This document shows, in pieces, positions 7,117 to 26,052 of a stretch of 64,000 nucleotides of DNA (position 1 is its first letter; every line of letters begins with the position of its first letter). The stretch covers positions 124,001-188,000 of IMG/VR virus record IMGVR_UViG_3300047320_000285. One strand, 5' to 3'. The notes beneath the pieces were generated by a model, which was given only the letters and a program-made list of their open reading frames with translations, was not told the origin of the DNA and ran no database searches. The position numbers were made by a program, and so were the translations under genes.

Positions 7117-7788
7117 GTGTCAGGCAATATGACGAGCGGGTTAGTTCTTCCGCCCTGCATAAGAGAAGGCGACTGTGGAAAATTTTCATTCACTTCCTCT
7201 AAGGGCGGACCAGCGATGACCCACAGGAAAGACATCATTATTGTGCCGTACTGGGTGTACGAGTCGTTGCACCGCCACGGCATGAATCTGAGCGACTGCT
7301 TGGATTTCGAAAAGATTCGCGGGGTGTTCTCCCAGTCGGATCTGGTGCAGTTCCTCTGCAACCAAGCCGACATGAAGTACATCACCGGAAACGAGCAGAC
7401 CGGCCTTGAAGCTGATGCCGGGCTGTGGGGTAAGTGGAATCAAACGCTCATGACCGAAGACGCGAAGAAGCTGTTGTACAACGCGGTTTCGCCCATGTCG
7501 ACCGATCCCACCTTCCAACAGGCGGCACGGGATCGCCTGTTCAGCCCGGCCGTTAAACGCGCGCGGGATGAAGAAGCTTTTATTACATATGACATTGCAC
7601 CTGAAGTCGGGGCGATCGTCGTGTATCCCGGGCACTTCACCTCGGCAGTACTCGGAGAGCTTCAGGTCCGCGCCCTGCAGGCTATTCTGAAAGTATTGTA
7701 TGTGTACAACACACAGCACGAGGTGTCGCGCACACCGTGGTTCCGGCAGTATCTGACGGGGCTGTCTCTCAAGCAGGCTGCTGCCTGA
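7117..7788 (+). CDS. Conserved virion-associated protein (phiKZ gp119-like); start may be 7216
   Basis: 223-aa ORF between dnaB and the capsid gene, syntenic with phiKZ. Confidence 0.7.
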   Translation: MSGNMTSGLVLPPCIREGDCGKFSFTSSKGGPAMTHRKDIIIVPYWVYESLHRHGMNLSDCLDFEKIRGVFSQSDLVQFLCNQADMKYITGNEQTGLEADAGLWGKWNQTLMTEDAKKLLYNAVSPMSTDPTFQQAARDRLFSPAVKRARDEEAFITYDIAPEVGAIVVYPGHFTSAVLGELQVRALQAILKVLYVYNTQHEVSRTPWFRQYLTGLSLKQAAA

Positions 7789-7850: not shown

Positions 7851-10097
7851 ATGTCCAGTCCGTTTCAACTCCGTGACAAATCCAAGGCCGGCACGATCGG
7901 CCACATGGTCCAACAACTCCACTCGGCGCTGAACCGCTCGGGCGCGTCCTTCGCCAGCAACGCTGCTGTGAAGCGTGTGATCTCGATGGAAGGCCTGAGC
8001 GACACGCAACAGACCGAGTTCACGACTTCGCTCGAGTCGTTGCAACTGTCGATCGGCGAAGTCTCGAAGACTTTCGACGAAGGCAAGGGCAAGTACAAGG
8101 TTGCCACCGAAAGCGGTGAAGAACTGCGTTTCTCGTCGCACACGACGGAAGCTCAGAAGTTCGCCGGTATGGTGGCTGGTATGCTCGCCGCTGACGTGCC
8201 GGGTTTCCTCGGTCGCTCGGTGACGCAGCAACCCGCGATGGAGCAGGGCCAGATGTTCGTCCCGGCATCGGGTGCCGACATGCTCGAGAAGCGCACGCAC
8301 GCGCTCGAAGCATACGACGAGAAGGAAAACAAGGAAACGACCGTGTATTCGGTCGCGTACAACATGCAGGCCGCCACGCAGGACGAGTTCGGCGAAGCGC
8401 TGTTCCCGACCTGTATCGTGACGCCGGACCAGTACGGTCTGACGATCTCGATGCGCCTGATCATGGTGATGGACGACCTGCGCCGCAACGCGTCGGGCGA
8501 AGCCATCCGTGACTTCCAGCGCAAGAACATCATCCGCGCAGCGATCGATCCGGCAGTCCTCCGCAACGATCTGACGAAGATCTTCCCGGTCGTGACCGAC
8601 GACGGCGTGGCACTGGGCAACTTCGTCGACGCTGCACTCGTGCCGCCGCAAACGATCGTCCACGAAGGTCAGTCGATCGAAACGGCACCGCTCGCCATTG
8701 GCGCGCAGTTCGACCTGCTGGGCATCTCGCAAACGGAAGCGCTGCTGCAAACGGGCACGCTCGACACGACCGACGCGATCGACCCGAACATCGTGCTCGG
8801 CGCGCTGTACATGTCGATTCAAGGCACGGTGGCCACGGTTGCCACGACGGAAGTCATCAAGTTCGGTAACGTCGGCCTGATGCAAGGTTCGACGATGACG
8901 GCGGCGCCGCAAGGCAACTACCGTCAGCAAATGCTGAACTTCGTGACGGACTCGCTGGCCGTCAACAAGAACACGGTGCTGAACGACGGCGCGGCTTCGG
9001 CCCTGCTGACCTCGCTGGTTACGGCTGGCGCGCAAGTCAAGCTGGCTGTCACGGTGGGCGGTAACGTCAACCTGCAGACGGCTGAAACGTCGATCTGGTC
9101 GGGCAAGGTTCAAGTCGCGGAAGTGCGTGACGCGAACAACAACGTGCTCGACATGACGACCGGCACGGGTCTGGCGTACAAGAACCTGTTCAACGGCGCG
9201 GTGATCTTCGGTTACGACCTCGACGCACGTCGTGTGAACACGAACCGTCGCGAGCGCGGCCAGCTGCTGGACATCACGTATCAAAACGTGATTTACGGCG
9301 TGCCGCTTCTGTCGCCGATCACGGCACCGCGTCCGCCGGCAGGTCCGCAGCAAGACGAAGCGAACTACTTGGCAGGTCTGATCACGGCAACGCGTATCCG
9401 TACGTCGAACGCCGCAGTCGCCAAGCTGCTCGAAGCTGAAGAAGCGCTGAAGGCATTCGTCACGACGAACCTCGGCGACGACCAGTTCGTCAAGCCGGAA
9501 ATCCTCGGCGTGGGTGGCTGGCTGGTGCAGCCGCAGTACCTGCAAGAAGACTACGCTGCACCGTCGGTCGTCGACAGCATCAAGTCGTACGAACGCGCTG
9601 CTGACATTCAGGCTTCGCTGGTCAACATGATCCGCGAAATGGCCTACCGCATGTACCGCGACTCCGGCTACAAGGCCGCAGCCAACGCGATGCACGGCGG
9701 TATCGCGCCGATGCCGACGGTCATCATCGCAACCGACACGTACATCGCGTCGTACCTGCAGGTGACGGGTGACTTCCGTACGCTCGGTAACGAGTTCAAC
9801 GTGAAGGTCGTGTCGACGACGAACAAGCTGATGAAGGGCAAGATCCGCATCACGTTCGGTGAGTTCGGCGAAGGCAAGGAAAACACCCCGAACCCGCTGC
9901 ACTTCGGCGTGATGGCGTGGAAGCCGGAACTGACGCTGATTCTGCCGACGGTGCGTAACGGTTCGAACAGCCGTGAAATCTCGGTTTCGCCGGCATTCCG
10001 CCACATCGTGAACCTGCCGATCATGGCATCGATCGACGTGTCGGGTATCGACGAAGTCGTGAACGCGAAGGTCGCCGTCAACTTCCACACGATCTGA
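7851..10097 (+). CDS. Major capsid protein precursor (phiKZ gp120-like)
   Basis: ATG 7851 with SD AAGGAAG, 748 aa, very strong codon bias. Propeptide with ISME/SLE/ATE/AME ends at THALE (residue 153), followed by AYDEKENKETTVYSVAYN. C-terminal NPLHFG and PAFRHIVNLPI. Confidence 0.95.
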   Translation: MSSPFQLRDKSKAGTIGHMVQQLHSALNRSGASFASNAAVKRVISMEGLSDTQQTEFTTSLESLQLSIGEVSKTFDEGKGKYKVATESGEELRFSSHTTEAQKFAGMVAGMLAADVPGFLGRSVTQQPAMEQGQMFVPASGADMLEKRTHALEAYDEKENKETTVYSVAYNMQAATQDEFGEALFPTCIVTPDQYGLTISMRLIMVMDDLRRNASGEAIRDFQRKNIIRAAIDPAVLRNDLTKIFPVVTDDGVALGNFVDAALVPPQTIVHEGQSIETAPLAIGAQFDLLGISQTEALLQTGTLDTTDAIDPNIVLGALYMSIQGTVATVATTEVIKFGNVGLMQGSTMTAAPQGNYRQQMLNFVTDSLAVNKNTVLNDGAASALLTSLVTAGAQVKLAVTVGGNVNLQTAETSIWSGKVQVAEVRDANNNVLDMTTGTGLAYKNLFNGAVIFGYDLDARRVNTNRRERGQLLDITYQNVIYGVPLLSPITAPRPPAGPQQDEANYLAGLITATRIRTSNAAVAKLLEAEEALKAFVTTNLGDDQFVKPEILGVGGWLVQPQYLQEDYAAPSVVDSIKSYERAADIQASLVNMIREMAYRMYRDSGYKAAANAMHGGIAPMPTVIIATDTYIASYLQVTGDFRTLGNEFNVKVVSTTNKLMKGKIRITFGEFGEGKENTPNPLHFGVMAWKPELTLILPTVRNGSNSREISVSPAFRHIVNLPIMASIDVSGIDEVVNAKVAVNFHTI

Positions 10098-10105
10098 GGG
10101 AATAG

Positions 10106-10211
10106 CTTAGTCACGGTGACAGACTTGAGCGGCTTCCGGGAGTACTCCGCAGGGAGTTCCTGAAGTCAATGGGTCTGTCTGAAATAGGGGGCAGACCCAC
10201 CGTGACCTAAG
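10106..10211 (+). ncRNA. Candidate structured RNA (three-way junction) just after the capsid stop
   Basis: P1 CTTAGTCACGGT (10106-17) pairs with ACCGTGACCTAAG (10199-211). P2 10133-148/10153-165 has a GCAG loop. P3 GGGTCTGTC/GGCAGACCC (10171-79/10190-98). Confidence 0.4.
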
Positions 10212-10245
10212 GTGACTCTCAGCGGTAAGGCTTGTGGTTGGGGCT

Positions 10246-10294
10246 GTCCCACTCCCTCGGGTCTTCGGACTCGGGGGGTGTGGGACTTTATGCC
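10246..10294 (+). terminator. Capsid operon terminator: long stem with cUUCGg loop then TTTATGCC
   Basis: GTCCCACTCCCTCGGGTC-TTCG-GACTCGGGGGGTGTGGGAC-TTTATGCC. Confidence 0.7.
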
Positions 10295-10317
10295 TGTAAA
10301 TTTTCTATCGCATGTTC

Positions 10318-10407
10318 TATGATCTGGAGGCAGTGCGCGAGTGCTGTCTTGCAGGGATCCGAAGGTAGACGGGAGCCTCACGGTTTCCGTCTACTGGGTG
10401 TTATGCC
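10318..10407 (+). ncRNA. Candidate small late RNA: TATG, GNRA hairpin, second hairpin, TTATGCC
   Basis: TATG 10318-21; stem 10327-36/10341-50 with GCGA loop; stem GTAGACGGGAGCC/GGTTTCCGTCTAC 10365-94; TTATGCC 10401-07; no credible ORF. Confidence 0.35.
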
Positions 10408-10430
10408 GTTGCTGCATTTATTTTTGGCAA

Positions 10431-10438
10431 TATATTAC
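10431..10438 (+). promoter_or_regulatory. phiKZ-type early (virion RNAP) promoter TATATTAC
   Basis: Exact match to the established phiKZ early consensus, preceded by an AT tract (TTTATTTTT). Lies 73 nt upstream of the operon leading to an nvRNAP subunit, which must be expressed early. Confidence 0.6.
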
Positions 10439-10510
10439 CAACTAGCATGAGAAGAGCCGGTAACAAGCTGGCCTGATAAGTTAAGCCGTGCAAGCTGTAG
10501 GAGTTTTGCC

Positions 10511-11713
10511 ATGAGTGCCCATTTTGGCCAGAACGTTTTCTTCGGCGCTCCGATTGTACGAGTAGGCGTGTATCCTGCTGAACGTGCGTACGATCTTTCT
10601 CCTGTGGAAATCAAGCAGGAGTTTATCAACGAGCTGCATGAGAACGTCACCATCGTGCTAAGGAATGGGTTGCCCTTTCAGATTCGCGGCAAGAAAGGAC
10701 AAGCCCGCCGAAGACTGACGGTCAATTACACCATCGTTATCAGTGGTGAAGCGGTACATGAGACTGCGAACGTGCTCGCTCAGATCACTTCCCGCAGTCC
10801 GGTGACTATGCGCATCCTGAAGGAGGCTTATGAATCCCACGCAAGGAATTATTCGCCCAACCAACCGATCGTACTCAAACTTGAGTACATCATCACCCGC
10901 GAGGAGTTGAGAAAATACGGCAATTCCCTCTATCATCACGGATTGGATTGCTGGATCAGTACTACCGAGAGCACCAACTACGCAGTGCATCCGTATTCCG
11001 AAGAGGGCATGCTGCAAGGCACGATCTGGAATAACACACCCGATGCAGTCAAAGGTGGGGGTGCGTTGTATGCCGTGGAGATTGTCGATAACCTCGGCAC
11101 GTTTGGCGATCGGTATCTGAATATTGCCAACGAGATCTATCCGGTTCGGGCCAAGAAAGATGCCAAGCGCACCGATGGCGTGTATATCACGCGCACGTTA
11201 CCGAGCGAAGGGGAGTTGGGACGCGGGGAGATTGTGGCAGCGCATTGGCCGTTTAACAAGGCCGATGGTGCAGACTTCGATTTCACTGAGTTCCATCTGT
11301 ATCGGACTTTCACCGATGCCAAGACGCTGGGCGACATTGCGTCGGCCCGCAAGGCGGAGTTGCAGAGCAAAGATCACGAGCTGCAGCTCGGGCGCAAAGA
11401 ACTGGAGGCACTCAAACAGGAGGCGGAACGGAACAAGGCGGACTTCGACAGGGATAAACAAGCGCAAGAACGTGAGAACCAGCGCCTGCAACAGGAGATC
11501 ACTGAAAAGGATCGCCGGTATAAGGAGCTAGAAGTTGAGCGCGAGCGCATCAAGCATGAGTTGGAGTTGGAAAGAATGCGCAAGAAGGATCAGTACGAGG
11601 AACGGTCATCCAAGCGTAAGGATACGAGCGAGATGGTGAAGATCTTACCTGCCTTGATACTGGGGGCAGCCGCGATTATCACCACGCTTATCAGCGTGAC
11701 AAGGTCTAAGTAG
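10511..11713 (+). CDS. Conserved protein with long coiled coil and C-terminal TM anchor (phiKZ gp122-like position)
   Basis: SD AGGAG. E/K/R-rich heptads in the last ~130 aa, then ILPALILGAAAIITTLISV. Confidence 0.8.
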   Translation: MSAHFGQNVFFGAPIVRVGVYPAERAYDLSPVEIKQEFINELHENVTIVLRNGLPFQIRGKKGQARRRLTVNYTIVISGEAVHETANVLAQITSRSPVTMRILKEAYESHARNYSPNQPIVLKLEYIITREELRKYGNSLYHHGLDCWISTTESTNYAVHPYSEEGMLQGTIWNNTPDAVKGGGALYAVEIVDNLGTFGDRYLNIANEIYPVRAKKDAKRTDGVYITRTLPSEGELGRGEIVAAHWPFNKADGADFDFTEFHLYRTFTDAKTLGDIASARKAELQSKDHELQLGRKELEALKQEAERNKADFDRDKQAQERENQRLQQEITEKDRRYKELEVERERIKHELELERMRKKDQYEERSSKRKDTSEMVKILPALILGAAAIITTLISVTRSK

Positions 11714-23691: not shown

Positions 23692-26052
23692 ATGGCGAAC
23701 TCAAACTATTACCAAATCTACATCGGTAAAGTCCTTCAGCTCGCTGCGACCATTGTGATTAAATCGACAGATTTTGCACAAGCAATCAACGCTGGCTTGC
23801 AGGCGCAGGCCATGGCCGCTGGGCTTTCCGCGGATTCGGCGGTCGATCTGACCGATCCGACAACGTGGAAGTACTATATGAATTTGGCAGGCGCGTATCA
23901 TCCGACCGATACCCCGATGCAAGTGGTGTCCATGGATACGCTGGAAACCATCGATTTTACGGTGGCGAACCTCGCAATCCATCGGGCGACCAATCGCGCC
24001 TACCAGTACGGCACCCGCCAGTACAATGAGTTGCTCTCGCTCTACCCGCAACAGGAAATGCTGATCCGCGGCATTCTCTACCCGGTCGATCTGGCGACGG
24101 CGATTGCCGCGGACGACTACACGATTCTGGGCGGTTACCCGGCGGGGCTGGTGGAAGCGAACGAATACACCCTGATCGAGCGTTTGCAGACGTGGATCAA
24201 CGGCACCATGCTGCGCTGGTACAACCGCGCCTACACGGTGTCGGACAATCTGTACTGTGCGGCGCACTGGGGCAAGGTGTATTTGTTTCTCGTCCCGGCG
24301 ATTTTGAACCTGCGCCTCGAGAAGTGTAAAACCAATGAGGCTCATAGTTTTCACGTACGTCAGTATCTGGCCTCGCATGGCGGGCTGGATGCGTTCTTTG
24401 AACAGCTCACCACCGCCCAATCGCTGGCGCTGTATCGCAACATCGCCTACCTCGAACGCCATCCGGGGCAACAGGCGAGCTTTACGTATCTGGTCCGCAA
24501 GCTGCTCACCGAGCGTAACTTGCCGCTGGCCGAGTACGACATGAAGCACGATACGTCACAGATGGATGGCTTTGATCCGGTGCTCTCCGGCACCGAAGGC
24601 AATCGGGGGAGCGACATCCAACCGACCATCTTCTTTGAACGTACCCCGCTGAACTTGGGCTTTAGCTTCGACACGGCCAACATCGCCACACTCGATCAGT
24701 TGCTGACCAAGGAACAGCCCACCGCTCGGGATAACGCAGAGTTTCAGACCGACGTGGAACCTGCGATCCGCTCGCAGATGGCGTACTCGCTGGGTAACAA
24801 GCTCAAGACCAAGGCGCTGGAATCGGCCATGGTGGACTACACCGATGCGTCGCCCTACACGCTCACCTCGACCCTACTCAATCACTGGTTGTGGCTGGCG
24901 CACTCCGGCTACTACACCGCGGTGGTGAATGTGGCCAATCCGGTCACCGGGGAACGGATCGCCTTACCGGCGCTTGACGCATATGCTTTCATGTGGTACG
25001 CGTTCTGCCAGACCATCGGTCTCGTGCTCGATGAGATCCCACCGGTGTTGGCCACCCACGTCCAGCGGATCCCCACGCCCTCGCCGTCGGACCTGATGAG
25101 CGTGGTGGATACCAGCATGGTGGGGATTGACCGCGCCAAGTGGTTGCTCTCGTATCAGCCGGTGATCACCAACATGATCTCCACCGATGCGTTCTACGCC
25201 ATGTGTCAACAGATCTGGCGTGCGGAGAATATCCAAGCCAATATCGTCGCGCTGGAGGAGCATCAGGTTAAACGCGCCTACGTGGATAACATGATGAATC
25301 GCATCTACGCCGATGTGCTGGTGCCGCTGTCGACACCGGGGGATAATTACAAGGCATGGTTTGCCGCGCGCAACATCGATCTGACCGGCTGGTCGAAAGA
25401 TGACTTCGGGCTGGTGTACACGAGTCTGGTGGCCACCGCCACGGGGCAGGACTTGACCACCAATAACTCGGTGGCGGCGTTGCAAAAGGCCATGATCGGG
25501 ATCATGCAACAGCTCTCGTCCTACAGCGTGCAGTACCTTGCGTACATCAACAGCGGGGCGATTGTACCGCTCGACTGGCCGATGGTGCGACTGGGCGACA
25601 TCAACGCCAAGATCTTGGGCGAGTATGAAATCCCCAACCTGAACGTCCGCCTGCTGGACTTTGGCAGTACCTTGCGCCGCGTGCTGAAGCTGCCGATCTG
25701 GTACAACGACTTTGACATGAGCCTGATGGTCAAGGTCAAGGACGGCTACCGTTACGAGATGAAAGACCTGATCCGGTTCGCCAAAGCACCGGCCACGGTG
25801 TACAAGCAGAAGCTGGACATCCCGGTGGACATCACATGGGAGGGTGCGGAAGCCACCAATGATCTGGGGATTTTCCCGGTACTGGGGATCGACCAATATT
25901 TGCAGTTGACCCCGGATCAGCAGCAGAACTTCAAGGATGTGTATGGCTCGTGCTGGACACCTGAGAATCCGCAATATGTACAACTGTCAACGCTCGTGCG
26001 CGCGACGGACCTCAATGGTCTGGTCTACGTGCAGCCGACACAGCAACCCTAG
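23692..26052 (+). CDS. Virion structural protein (phiKZ gp128-like)
   Basis: 786 aa; WKYYMNLAGAYHPTD and HSFHVRQYLASH motifs; synteny with portal. Confidence 0.75.
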   Translation: MANSNYYQIYIGKVLQLAATIVIKSTDFAQAINAGLQAQAMAAGLSADSAVDLTDPTTWKYYMNLAGAYHPTDTPMQVVSMDTLETIDFTVANLAIHRATNRAYQYGTRQYNELLSLYPQQEMLIRGILYPVDLATAIAADDYTILGGYPAGLVEANEYTLIERLQTWINGTMLRWYNRAYTVSDNLYCAAHWGKVYLFLVPAILNLRLEKCKTNEAHSFHVRQYLASHGGLDAFFEQLTTAQSLALYRNIAYLERHPGQQASFTYLVRKLLTERNLPLAEYDMKHDTSQMDGFDPVLSGTEGNRGSDIQPTIFFERTPLNLGFSFDTANIATLDQLLTKEQPTARDNAEFQTDVEPAIRSQMAYSLGNKLKTKALESAMVDYTDASPYTLTSTLLNHWLWLAHSGYYTAVVNVANPVTGERIALPALDAYAFMWYAFCQTIGLVLDEIPPVLATHVQRIPTPSPSDLMSVVDTSMVGIDRAKWLLSYQPVITNMISTDAFYAMCQQIWRAENIQANIVALEEHQVKRAYVDNMMNRIYADVLVPLSTPGDNYKAWFAARNIDLTGWSKDDFGLVYTSLVATATGQDLTTNNSVAALQKAMIGIMQQLSSYSVQYLAYINSGAIVPLDWPMVRLGDINAKILGEYEIPNLNVRLLDFGSTLRRVLKLPIWYNDFDMSLMVKVKDGYRYEMKDLIRFAKAPATVYKQKLDIPVDITWEGAEATNDLGIFPVLGIDQYLQLTPDQQQNFKDVYGSCWTPENPQYVQLSTLVRATDLNGLVYVQPTQQP

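What the first reader, a model, noticed from the sequence alone, without database searches (positions are those of the whole stretch)
10098..10212. Three-way-junction RNA starting 8 nt after the major capsid stop codon
Seen: a 12-13 bp outer stem with one bulge (10106-17/10199-211) encloses two hairpins. It lies upstream of, and is distinct from, the real terminator at 10246-94, so termination does not explain it. Inference: a 3'-UTR element or processed sRNA from the most abundant late mRNA, possibly a packaging or assembly RNA. Alternative: a UGA read-through stimulator; read-through would add a residue plus GNSLVTVTDLSGFREYSAGSS before TGA 10161.
Basis: partly seen in the sequence, partly recalled or inferred. 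Interest (0 to 1): 0.65.

Follow-up and report, generated by a model that had tools for sequence, protein, structure and literature searches.

The report
Leaky stop extends jumbo-phage capsid protein
The folded RNA just after the major capsid gene is real and conserved, and it sits on a short, conserved in-frame coding extension behind a UGA stop, so a fraction of ribosomes probably read through and make a longer capsid protein, in this phage and apparently in relatives including phiKZ and Goslar.

Summary
The three-way junction exists as described: -53.7 kcal/mol, z -4.97, outer stem starting 8 nt after the capsid stop. Its architecture recurs with compensatory changes in divergent relatives.

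It is not a plain 3'-UTR element. In about 25 distinct relatives whose major capsid gene ends in TGA, about 20 have 15-21 in-frame codons carrying the motif (L)V.V.DL.GF..Y.G, followed by a second stop. None of 41 TAA-ending relatives has it, and it never appears in the other two frames.

- The extension evolves like coding sequence: pN/pS 0.51 in frame 0, against 1.13 and 1.58 in the other frames.
- Proteus phage 10 and Xanthomonas phage LucasX carry the same motif fused inside the capsid ORF.
- Near-identical soil strains keep the TGA, show mostly synonymous changes in the extension, and show a G-C to A-U swap in hairpin 2.
- Sampled chimalliviruses from other hosts (phiKZ-like PA7, PhiPA3, PS119XW, Noxifer, Goslar, Serratia 2050HW and Haymo, Erwinia pEa_SNUABM_54) also pair a TGA stop with an in-frame extension. 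It is conserved wherever two or more members of a group could be compared.
- The phiKZ-type group has a covarying stem from about +13.

Best reading: programmed UGA read-through makes a minor, C-terminally extended capsid protein, and the junction is the likely 3' stimulator. No RNA or protein data were available. I found no prior description.

The parts
7851..10097 (+). Major capsid protein gene (748 codons plus stop). The mechanical ORF starts at GTG 7737, but the alignment to the FLC9 capsid protein begins at ATG 7851, which follows an AAGGAAG ribosome-binding site.
   Evidence: PHROG phrog_3231 major head protein, E 6e-185. 56% identity to FLC9 gp92 from residue 39 of the ORF. PDB relatives are Goslar MCP 11bt and phiKZ gp120 8y6v.
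10095..10097 (+). UGA stop codon of the capsid gene, followed by G. This is the proposed leaky (read-through) stop.
   Evidence: Sequence. A TGA stop goes with the extension in every motif-bearing relative. It is unchanged in four soil-metagenome near relatives.
10098..10163 (+). In-frame read-through extension of 21 codons (GNSLVTVTDLSGFREYSAGSS) plus the second stop, TGA 10161-10163.
   Evidence: pN/pS is 0.51 in frame 0 against 1.13 and 1.58 in frames 1 and 2. Four of the six or seven single-base changes listed here in near relatives are synonymous.
10107..10145 (+). Conserved peptide core LVTVTDLSGFREY, matching the family motif (L)V.V.DL.GF..Y.
   Evidence: The motif D[LIVM].G[FLYW] occurs only in frame 0 and only after TGA, in 17 unique loci. 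Gly uses four codons, Leu four, Phe two. The motif is fused in-ORF in Proteus phage 10 and LucasX.
10106..10211 (+). Three-way junction: outer stem 10106-10117 with 10199-10211, hairpin 1 at 10122-10167 (includes the second stop), hairpin 2 at 10171-10198. Weaker extra pairs are 10103-10104 with 10213-10214 and 10095-10100 with 10216-10221.
   Evidence: Folds. The same outer stem at +12..+23 appears in FLC9-type, L010-type, L028/L039, L029 and L068 loci with different sequences. In the four-sequence alignment 85% of cells are paired, against 27-48% when the partners are slid, and 4 pairs change on both sides. A G10172A + C10197T double change occurs in near relatives.
10238..10294 (+). End-of-transcript module: TTGGGGCT (10238-10245), a GC-rich hairpin (10246-10286), and TTTATGCC (10287-10294).
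   Evidence: There are 44 TTATGCC sites in the genome, and 35 of them are preceded by a hairpin of -15 kcal/mol or stronger, against 8% of random positions. The same module follows the capsid gene in relatives.
10295..10439 (+). Variable spacer with two more hairpins (about 10323-10352 and 10367-10398), a second TTATGCC (10401-10407), and ATATATTACC (10430-10439), ahead of the next gene (10511-11713).
   Evidence: In near relatives 10295-10429 is replaced by 22 nt. ATATTAC(C/T) is conserved in relatives and resembles the phiKZ middle-promoter motif AAanTTACc (PMC4666361).

Best explanation
The capsid mRNA carries a programmed UGA read-through signal. Most ribosomes stop at UGA 10095-10097 and make the normal 748-residue major capsid protein. 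A minority decode the UGA and continue for 21 more codons to the second stop at 10161. By analogy with Qbeta and E. coli, the decoding tRNA is most likely near-cognate tRNA-Trp. The product is a capsid protein with a 22-residue C-terminal tail that carries the conserved motif LV.V.DL.GF..Y.

The three-way junction begins 8 nt after the UGA and overlaps the extension. It is most likely the 3' stimulatory structure: it would sit at the mRNA entry channel while the UGA is in the A site and favour read-through over release-factor 2.

Shown here: the structure, its covariation, the frame-0 coding signature, and the link between TGA and the extension across clades. Inferred: that read-through actually occurs, its level, the residue inserted, that the junction stimulates it, and what the tail does.

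In phiKZ the capsid C-terminal arms meet at the centre of each hexon and move outward in pentons to bind a vertex protein (PMC11297242). A sub-stoichiometric tail at special capsomer positions is therefore plausible, but it is speculation.
For: 1. TGA is linked to the extension. Of about 25 distinct TGA-ending relatives, about 20 have a 15-21 codon in-frame extension with the motif and then a stop. None of 41 TAA-ending loci has it, and the motif is never found in frames 1 or 2.
2. On the capsid tree the TGA+extension state sits in at least 5-6 separated clades, interspersed with TAA lineages that have no extension.
3. The extension looks like coding sequence. Gly uses GGC/GGA/GGT/GGG, Leu TTG/CTG/CTC/CTA, Phe TTC/TTT. 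pN/pS is 0.51 in frame 0 against 1.13 and 1.58, similar to the last 17 capsid codons at 0.67.
4. The same motif is part of the capsid ORF itself in Proteus phage 10 (...KTDLDGLKQPGAKD*) and LucasX (...VYLDGLKYPTP*).
5. Near relatives in soil metagenomes keep the TGA. They show synonymous changes at 10103, 10127, 10136 and 10148, and a compensatory 10172/10197 change in hairpin 2.
6. The outer stem starts at +12 in six lineages with compensatory changes; position 18 shows CG, GC, UA and AU pairs. The Ralstonia RP12 clade has a hairpin starting about 6 nt after the UGA, with a compensatory change in L083.
7. The pattern holds in sampled chimalliviruses of other hosts: all 13 TGA-ending GenBank phages examined have a 15-30 codon in-frame extension. 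It is conserved wherever a group has more than one member (phiKZ type, and 2050HW against Haymo with many synonymous changes). The phiKZ-type group has a covarying stem from +13.
8. The phage genome has no tRNA genes, so no phage-encoded suppressor is needed or available.
Against: There is no direct evidence of translation: no RNA-seq, ribosome profiling or proteomics could be laid on this phage, because one search found only DNA metagenomes. Published capsid structures and virion proteomes of phiKZ and Goslar use the annotated lengths and do not mention an extended form.

A stimulatory role for a 3' structure in stop-codon read-through is established for eukaryotic viruses (PMC3159437) but not, to my knowledge, for bacterial ribosomes.

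The second hairpin is missing in the FLC9-type clade, and the fold differs in the RP12 clade, so the exact three-way shape is not essential. Five TGA-ending relatives lack a recognisable motif: L031, L042, L049, L067 and L079. L079 is probably a frame break, and L049 looks decayed.

The overlap of RNA pairing and coding constraints complicates the pN/pS reading.
Confidence: 0.75

Rival explanations
1. Read-through is real, but the three-way junction does not stimulate it. On this view the junction is a 3'-end stability, processing or ribosome-clearance element of the most abundant late mRNA that happens to overlap the extension.
For: The whole 413-nt gap is unusually structured (z -7.1). Hairpin 2 is dispensable in the FLC9 clade and the fold differs in the RP12 clade. 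UGA followed by A, which most relatives have, lies in a context reported to bias termination in prokaryotes (PMC7026636), so context alone might suffice.
Against: A stem begins at a nearly fixed distance (about +12/+13 in the window clade and the phiKZ group, about +6 in the RP12 clade) in unrelated sequence backgrounds and covaries. TAA sister lineages lack both the extension and this structure, with only about 45-55 nt from the stop to the terminator module in L032 and L075.
Confidence: 0.15
2. The region is an untranslated 3'-UTR element or a processed small RNA, and the peptide-like conservation is a by-product of RNA constraints.
For: The structure is conserved and lies between the stop codon and the terminator. 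No protein data exist.
Against: Wobble-position variation with amino-acid conservation appears in unpaired as well as paired codons. pN/pS is below 1 only in frame 0. The motif is exclusive to frame 0 after TGA. It is fused inside the ORF in Proteus phage 10 and LucasX. No Rfam family matches.
Confidence: 0.06
3. The UGA encodes selenocysteine, and the downstream stem-loop is a bacterial SECIS element.
For: There is a UGA plus an adjacent downstream stem-loop, and bacterial SECIS elements lie immediately 3' of the UGA (PMC7026636). From general knowledge, the likely hosts have selenoprotein machinery.
Against: The shape, spacing and apical loops of the structure differ between clades, unlike a SelB-binding hairpin. 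No SECIS-like Rfam match appeared even at E 10. Lineages swap freely to TAA with loss of the tail, which fits an optional isoform better than a catalytic or structural Sec.
Confidence: 0.02
4. The extension is a relic: an ancestral longer C-terminus cut off by a nonsense mutation, with nothing translated now.
For: Some relatives carry the motif inside the ORF, so a longer ancestor is plausible. L049 looks like a decaying copy.
Against: The TGA and the downstream frame, including the position of the second stop, are retained across lineages with only 38-72% capsid identity, with purifying selection. A 1-nt deletion near the end in close relatives comes with two nearby substitutions that together put a TGA stop back in frame one codon later.
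Confidence: 0.02

Closest known systems
Coliphage Qbeta coat / A1 read-through protein
   Same: A phage capsid gene ends in a leaky UGA. A few percent of ribosomes read through (about 5% in Qbeta) and make a C-terminally extended minor capsid protein needed for infectious particles (PMC7026636).
   Different: Qbeta is a small ssRNA phage and its extension is a whole domain of about 200 residues. Here the phage is a 254-kb dsDNA jumbo phage with an HK97-fold capsid, the tail is only 15-30 residues, and there is a conserved downstream RNA structure.
3' RNA structure-stimulated UGA read-through of alphaviruses, coltiviruses and several plant viruses (Firth et al. 2011, PMC3159437)
   Same: An extended, phylogenetically conserved stem structure lies within the ~150 nt 3'-adjacent to a UGA and overlaps the read-through coding sequence. 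It was detected through covariation and suppressed synonymous variation (abstract read).
   Different: Those cases act on eukaryotic ribosomes and eRF1. Stimulation on bacterial ribosomes with RF2 is not established. Here the structure is a three-way junction or a two-tier stem that reaches beyond the second stop.
Frameshift-derived capsid extensions of dsDNA phages (T7 10A/10B, T3, Listeria phages PSA, A118 and A500; PMC5009743)
   Same: Two capsid protein isoforms come from one gene in a fixed ratio, and the minor form carries a C-terminal extension.
   Different: Those use -1 or +1 frameshifting at slippery sites into another frame. Here the extension is strictly in frame 0 behind a stop codon.
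Intrinsic terminators, and the hairpin+TTATGCC modules of this phage
   Same: GC-rich stem-loops downstream of a late gene.
   Different: The junction has no U-tract or TTATGCC tail. It lies upstream of the real end-of-transcript module at 10238-10294 and overlaps conserved codons.

Membership tests
Programmed stop-codon read-through (recoding) | A specific, conserved leaky stop codon (usually UGA) at the end of the upstream ORF | tested here: met
   TGA is present in all motif-bearing relatives, while lineages without the extension mostly use TAA. TGA is unchanged in near relatives.
Programmed stop-codon read-through (recoding) | An in-frame downstream ORF under purifying selection at the protein level, ending at a conserved second stop | tested here: met
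   pN/pS is 0.51 in frame 0 against 1.13 and 1.58. Synonymous codon variation at conserved residues. The motif is fused in-ORF in two phages.
Programmed stop-codon read-through (recoding) | An extended protein product is made at a set ratio | not testable with these tools
   No RNA, ribosome-profiling or proteome data for this phage. Published phiKZ and Goslar work does not address it.
3' structure-stimulated read-through | A conserved RNA structure a short spacer downstream of the stop, supported by covariation | tested here: met
   The outer stem runs from +12 with an 8-nt spacer. 85% of cells are paired against 27-48% when slid, and 4 pairs have double changes.
3' structure-stimulated read-through | Disrupting the structure lowers read-through and restoring it rescues read-through | not testable with these tools
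   This needs reporter assays.
Bacterial SECIS / selenocysteine insertion | A hairpin immediately 3' of the UGA with a conserved SelB-binding apical loop at a fixed distance | tested here: not met
   Architecture, spacing and loops vary between clades. No SECIS-type Rfam match at E up to 10.
Any curated Rfam RNA family | Score at or above the family's gathering threshold | tested here: not met
   The best hits in 9500-11000 score 10.8-19.1 bits against thresholds of 37-71 bits, with E 0.6-6.8.
Frameshift-type capsid extension (T7 10B-like) | The extension is encoded in the -1 or +1 frame behind a slippery site | tested here: not met
   The conserved motif occurs only in frame 0.
Intrinsic (rho-independent) terminator | A GC-rich hairpin followed directly by a U-tract | tested here: not met
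   The junction is followed by GGUGACUCUCAG rather than a U-run. The terminator-like module lies at 10246-10294.

The most novel reading that the evidence does not exclude
Programmed UGA read-through of the major capsid gene is an ancient trait found across many chimallivirus lineages, including the model phages phiKZ, PhiPA3 and Goslar. It would be driven by a downstream RNA structure acting on bacterial ribosomes, which to my knowledge would be the first such stimulator described in prokaryotes. The resulting few-percent isoform, with a short conserved tail, would mark special capsid positions. For example, the 55 penton subunits of 1,615 (3.4%) have C-terminal arms that are rearranged to bind a vertex protein. 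Alternatively the tail could be a docking handle during assembly or trafficking.
Probability: 0.35. Interest if true: 0.85.

Novelty: new variant of a known kind. Interest (0 to 1): 0.78.

Why it matters
Nucleus-forming jumbo phages are intensively studied, and high-resolution capsid structures and virion proteomes exist. All of that work assumes a single capsid protein species.

A conserved read-through isoform would add a hidden virion component. It could be checked directly by re-searching existing mass-spectrometry data with the extension peptides, and it is open to genetics (TGA to TAA or to a sense codon).

It would also extend programmed read-through from Qbeta to dsDNA phages. And it would give a natural, covariation-supported test case for whether a 3' RNA structure can tune termination on bacterial ribosomes.

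For annotation, it means that capsid genes of this family ending in TGA should carry a read-through feature.

Tried and rejected
- Rfam scan of 9500-11000 at E up to 10 gave only noise.
- The promoter/terminator consensus scan found nothing relevant near the junction.
- tRNA search found none in the window or in the whole 253.7-kb genome, so a phage suppressor tRNA is excluded.
- A single-protein scan of IMG/VR found nothing, and the 8-sequence alignment was too diverse to seed a scan. The 4-sequence alignment worked.
- The sequencing-run search found only DNA metagenomes, so transcript ends, a processed sRNA and expression could not be tested.
- Literature searches on read-through in jumbo-phage capsid genes, on phiKZ gp120, and on the predicted tryptic peptides found nothing relevant. 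The RP12/RP31 proteome paper gives no capsid isoform information in the main text.
- MAFFT could not keep the 3' arms in register across all 11 relatives (A3), so the formal pair count used the 4-sequence alignment A4. There L068 is one column off, which makes the result conservative.
- An independent small ORF was considered and rejected: the position-4 codon is UUA, UUG, AUG or CUG, and the RP12 clade has no start codon there.
- A frameshift was considered and rejected because the motif occurs only in frame 0.
- I did not fold the extended protein or run a complex prediction, because no partner is identified and a monomer model of a flexible tail would not be informative.

Full report
**What the window is.** The window lies in a 253,740-bp genome with 56.9% G+C and no tRNA genes. 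It was assembled from a rhizosphere metagenome. The local gene order is DnaB-like helicase (minus strand), a small ORF, the major capsid protein, a gap, a phrog_7727 protein, and an RNA polymerase subunit. The same order occurs in Burkholderia phage FLC9 and Ralstonia phages RP12, RP31, FLC1-1B and FLC4-3B, which are phiKZ-related jumbo phages. The capsid gene is 7851-10097. The mechanical ORF begins at 7737, but homology to FLC9 starts at ATG 7851 behind a ribosome-binding site. It ends in TGA at 10095-10097.

Bases 10098-10212 fold into an outer stem (10106-10117 with 10199-10211, one bulge) that encloses hairpins at 10122-10167 and 10171-10198. The MFE is -53.7 kcal/mol, z is -4.97, and no shuffle of 200 folds as well. 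In a longer fold the helix extends down to pair the stop codon itself. The whole 413-nt gap is highly structured (z -7.1). Downstream there is a separate module: TTGGGGCT, a strong hairpin at 10246-10286, and TTTATGCC. No Rfam family matches.

**The decisive lead came from the relatives.** In FLC9, RP12 and FLC1-1B the capsid gene also ends in UGA. The in-frame continuation gives a related peptide and then a second stop:

| Phage | In-frame continuation |
|---|---|
| Window | GNSLVTVTDLSGFREYSAGSS* |
| FLC9 | RTRLVEVTDLDGFKVYPG* |
| RP12 | RIGNTSPDGFNEFGA* |
| FLC1-1B | AFRVTDLDGFHEYGS* |

I then collected 77 more capsid loci from IMG/VR and metagenomes, which gave 67 distinct sequences. The results were:

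- Of 25 distinct TGA-ending genes, about 20 carry a 15-21 codon in-frame extension with the motif (L)V.V.DL.GF..Y.G.
- None of 41 TAA-ending genes does.
- The motif D[LIVM].G[FLYW] is found 17 times within 200 nt after the stop, always in frame 0 and always after TGA.
- On a maximum-likelihood capsid tree the TGA-plus-extension state occupies at least five or six separate clades, interleaved with TAA lineages. The pair has therefore been kept over long divergence (38-72% capsid identity) and lost repeatedly, each time together.

**The extension behaves as coding sequence.**

- The invariant Gly uses all four codons, the Leu uses four, and the Phe uses both.
- Summed over pairs, pN/pS is 0.51 in frame 0, against 1.13 and 1.58 in the other frames. 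This is comparable to the last 17 codons of the capsid gene proper, at 0.67.
- Two phages carry the same motif as the ordinary C-terminus of the capsid ORF: Proteus phage 10 (...KTDLDGLKQPGAKD*) and Xanthomonas phage LucasX (...VYLDGLKYPTP*). This is hard to reconcile with a non-translated element.
- Contigs from four soil-metagenome runs, 90-95% identical to the window, keep the TGA. In the extension they show synonymous changes at 10103, 10127, 10136 and 10148, plus R-to-Q and A-to-S changes at variable positions.
- Those contigs also have a 1-nt deletion near the end, together with two substitutions that put a TGA stop back in frame one codon later.

**The RNA structure is conserved too.** In the window, the FLC9 group, the L010 group, L028/L039, L029 and L068, a long-range stem starts at position +12 (counting the U of UGA as 1) and closes beyond the second stop. 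The sequences differ and the changes are compensatory:

- Position 18 forms C-G, G-C, U-A and A-U pairs in different lineages.
- Positions 15, 20 and 21 also covary.
- On a four-lineage alignment, 85% of cells pair, against 27-48% when the partners are slid. Four pairs change on both sides.

The full three-way shape with a second hairpin recurs in L028/L039, L029 and L068. The FLC9 and L010 groups lack hairpin 2. Near relatives of the window show a G-C to A-U double change in hairpin 2, at 10172 and 10197. The RP12 clade has instead a hairpin starting about 6 nt after the UGA, with a compensatory change in L083. TAA sister lineages have neither the extension nor this structure, and only about 45-55 nt separate the stop from the terminator module.

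**The pattern extends beyond this clade.** I examined 29 GenBank chimalliviruses in all.

- All 13 with a TGA stop have a 15-30 codon in-frame extension: FLC9, RP12, RP31, FLC1-1B, FLC4-3B, pEa_SNUABM_54, Goslar, phiKZ-like PA7, PhiPA3, PS119XW, Noxifer, and Serratia 2050HW and Haymo.
- The 13 TAA-ending ones have no conserved extension.
- The phiKZ-type extensions are mutually conserved, with synonymous changes (pS 0.39-0.59, pN 0.19-0.25). PA7 reads AGKGYRYLENGTIRYLEDGNARKLEE*. PhiPA3 and PS119XW are similar.
- The phiKZ-type sequences fold into a two-tier stem from about +13 whose lower helix covaries: UUACCGU/ACGGUAA, CACUCCG/CGGAGUG and UUCCGU/ACGGAG.
- The two Serratia phages share TL.EAFE..L.GFDPA* with many synonymous differences, although the capsid residues just before the stop have diverged.
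- Goslar, 2050HW and pEa_SNUABM_54 share a hydrophobic-x-x-G-F core with the window clade.

**Mechanism.** The best-supported reading is programmed UGA read-through that yields a minor, C-terminally extended capsid protein. The phage has no tRNA, so decoding must rely on a host tRNA. From established knowledge of Qbeta and E. coli, this is most likely near-cognate tRNA-Trp. This step is inferred.

A stem beginning 8 nt after the stop would abut the ribosome's mRNA entrance while the UGA is in the A site. That is the geometry of the 3' stimulators described for eukaryotic viral read-through (PMC3159437). That it stimulates read-through on bacterial ribosomes is also inference.

The function of the tail is unknown. 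In phiKZ the capsid C-terminal arms form a six-helix bundle at each hexon centre, and in pentons they swing out to bind gp244 (PMC11297242). A tail there could be tolerated or useful only in a minority of subunits. Pentons make up 55 of 1,615 subunits, or 3.4% (subunit count from the Goslar preprint), which is close to typical read-through levels. This is a hypothesis, not a result.

**Prior knowledge.** The PDB entries for the phiKZ (8y6v, 747 residues) and Goslar (11bt, 740 residues) capsid proteins use the annotated lengths. The phiKZ capsid paper, the phiKZ atlas and the Goslar structure preprint do not mention read-through. Full-text searches found no report. The library lacks most subscription journals, so a prior description cannot be excluded.

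**Limits.** There is no expression or protein evidence, and only DNA metagenomes hold this phage. Five TGA-ending relatives lack a clear motif. Coding and pairing constraints overlap, so each estimate is imperfect. The GenBank survey covered 29 of about 218 records.

Noticed in passing
window 10246-10294 and 10367-10407; genome-wide in G000: A GC-rich hairpin followed by TTATGCC recurs 44 times in the genome (24 on the plus strand, 20 on the minus). 35 sites have a hairpin of -15 kcal/mol or stronger just upstream, against 8% of random sites. It often appears as a palindrome, GGCATAA-hairpin-TTATGCC. The same TTTATGCC tail follows hairpins after the capsid gene in FLC9, RP12, Eowyn, Proteus phage 10 and many metagenomic relatives. 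It contains TATG, the phiKZ late-promoter consensus for the non-virion RNA polymerase (PMC4666361), so it may be a combined terminator and late-promoter module.
   Followed up: partly
window 10238-10245: TTGGGGCT lies immediately 5' of the post-capsid terminator hairpin. It is conserved at that spot in many relatives, with or without the read-through extension (FLC9, L032, L035, L042, L047, L049, L067, L068). It occurs only 2+2 times in the whole genome, where about 4.7 per strand are expected. Its function is unknown.
   Followed up: no
window 10295-10429: In three soil-metagenome near relatives this 135-nt stretch, which holds two hairpins and the second TTATGCC, is replaced by 22 unrelated bases. 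The second half of the gap is therefore a strain-variable insertion, while the junction and first terminator are kept.
   Followed up: no
window 10430-10439: ATATATTACC lies about 70 nt upstream of the next gene (10511-11713, phrog_7727). It is conserved as ATATTAC(C/T) in FLC9, RP12, FLC1-1B and L032, and resembles the phiKZ middle-promoter motif AAanTTACc.
   Followed up: no
window 23692-26052 (+): A homologue of phiKZ gp128, a baseplate wedge protein, ends in ...LVRATDLNGLVYVQPTQQP*. This tail resembles the capsid extension motif LV.V.DL.GF..Y. It could be chance or a shared short docking motif. Its conservation in relatives was not checked.
   Followed up: no
whole genome G000: ARAGORN detects no tRNA or tmRNA gene in this 254-kb jumbo phage genome.
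   Followed up: yes
L049 2389-2440 (metagenome contig RCUP01000021.1): This is the sister of L046, which has a clear extension. It reads TGA-Ala-Pro-TGA-WVDLGSDSSEPE*, so it has a second in-frame TGA and a degraded motif. It may be an extension caught in decay, or a case of double read-through.
   Followed up: no
L003 and L005 (FLC1-1B, FLC4-3B), gene after the capsid gene: The annotated start of the phrog_7727 homologue lies about 300 nt later than in RP12 and the window, leaving an apparent 600-nt gap. This is probably a start-codon annotation difference.
   Followed up: no
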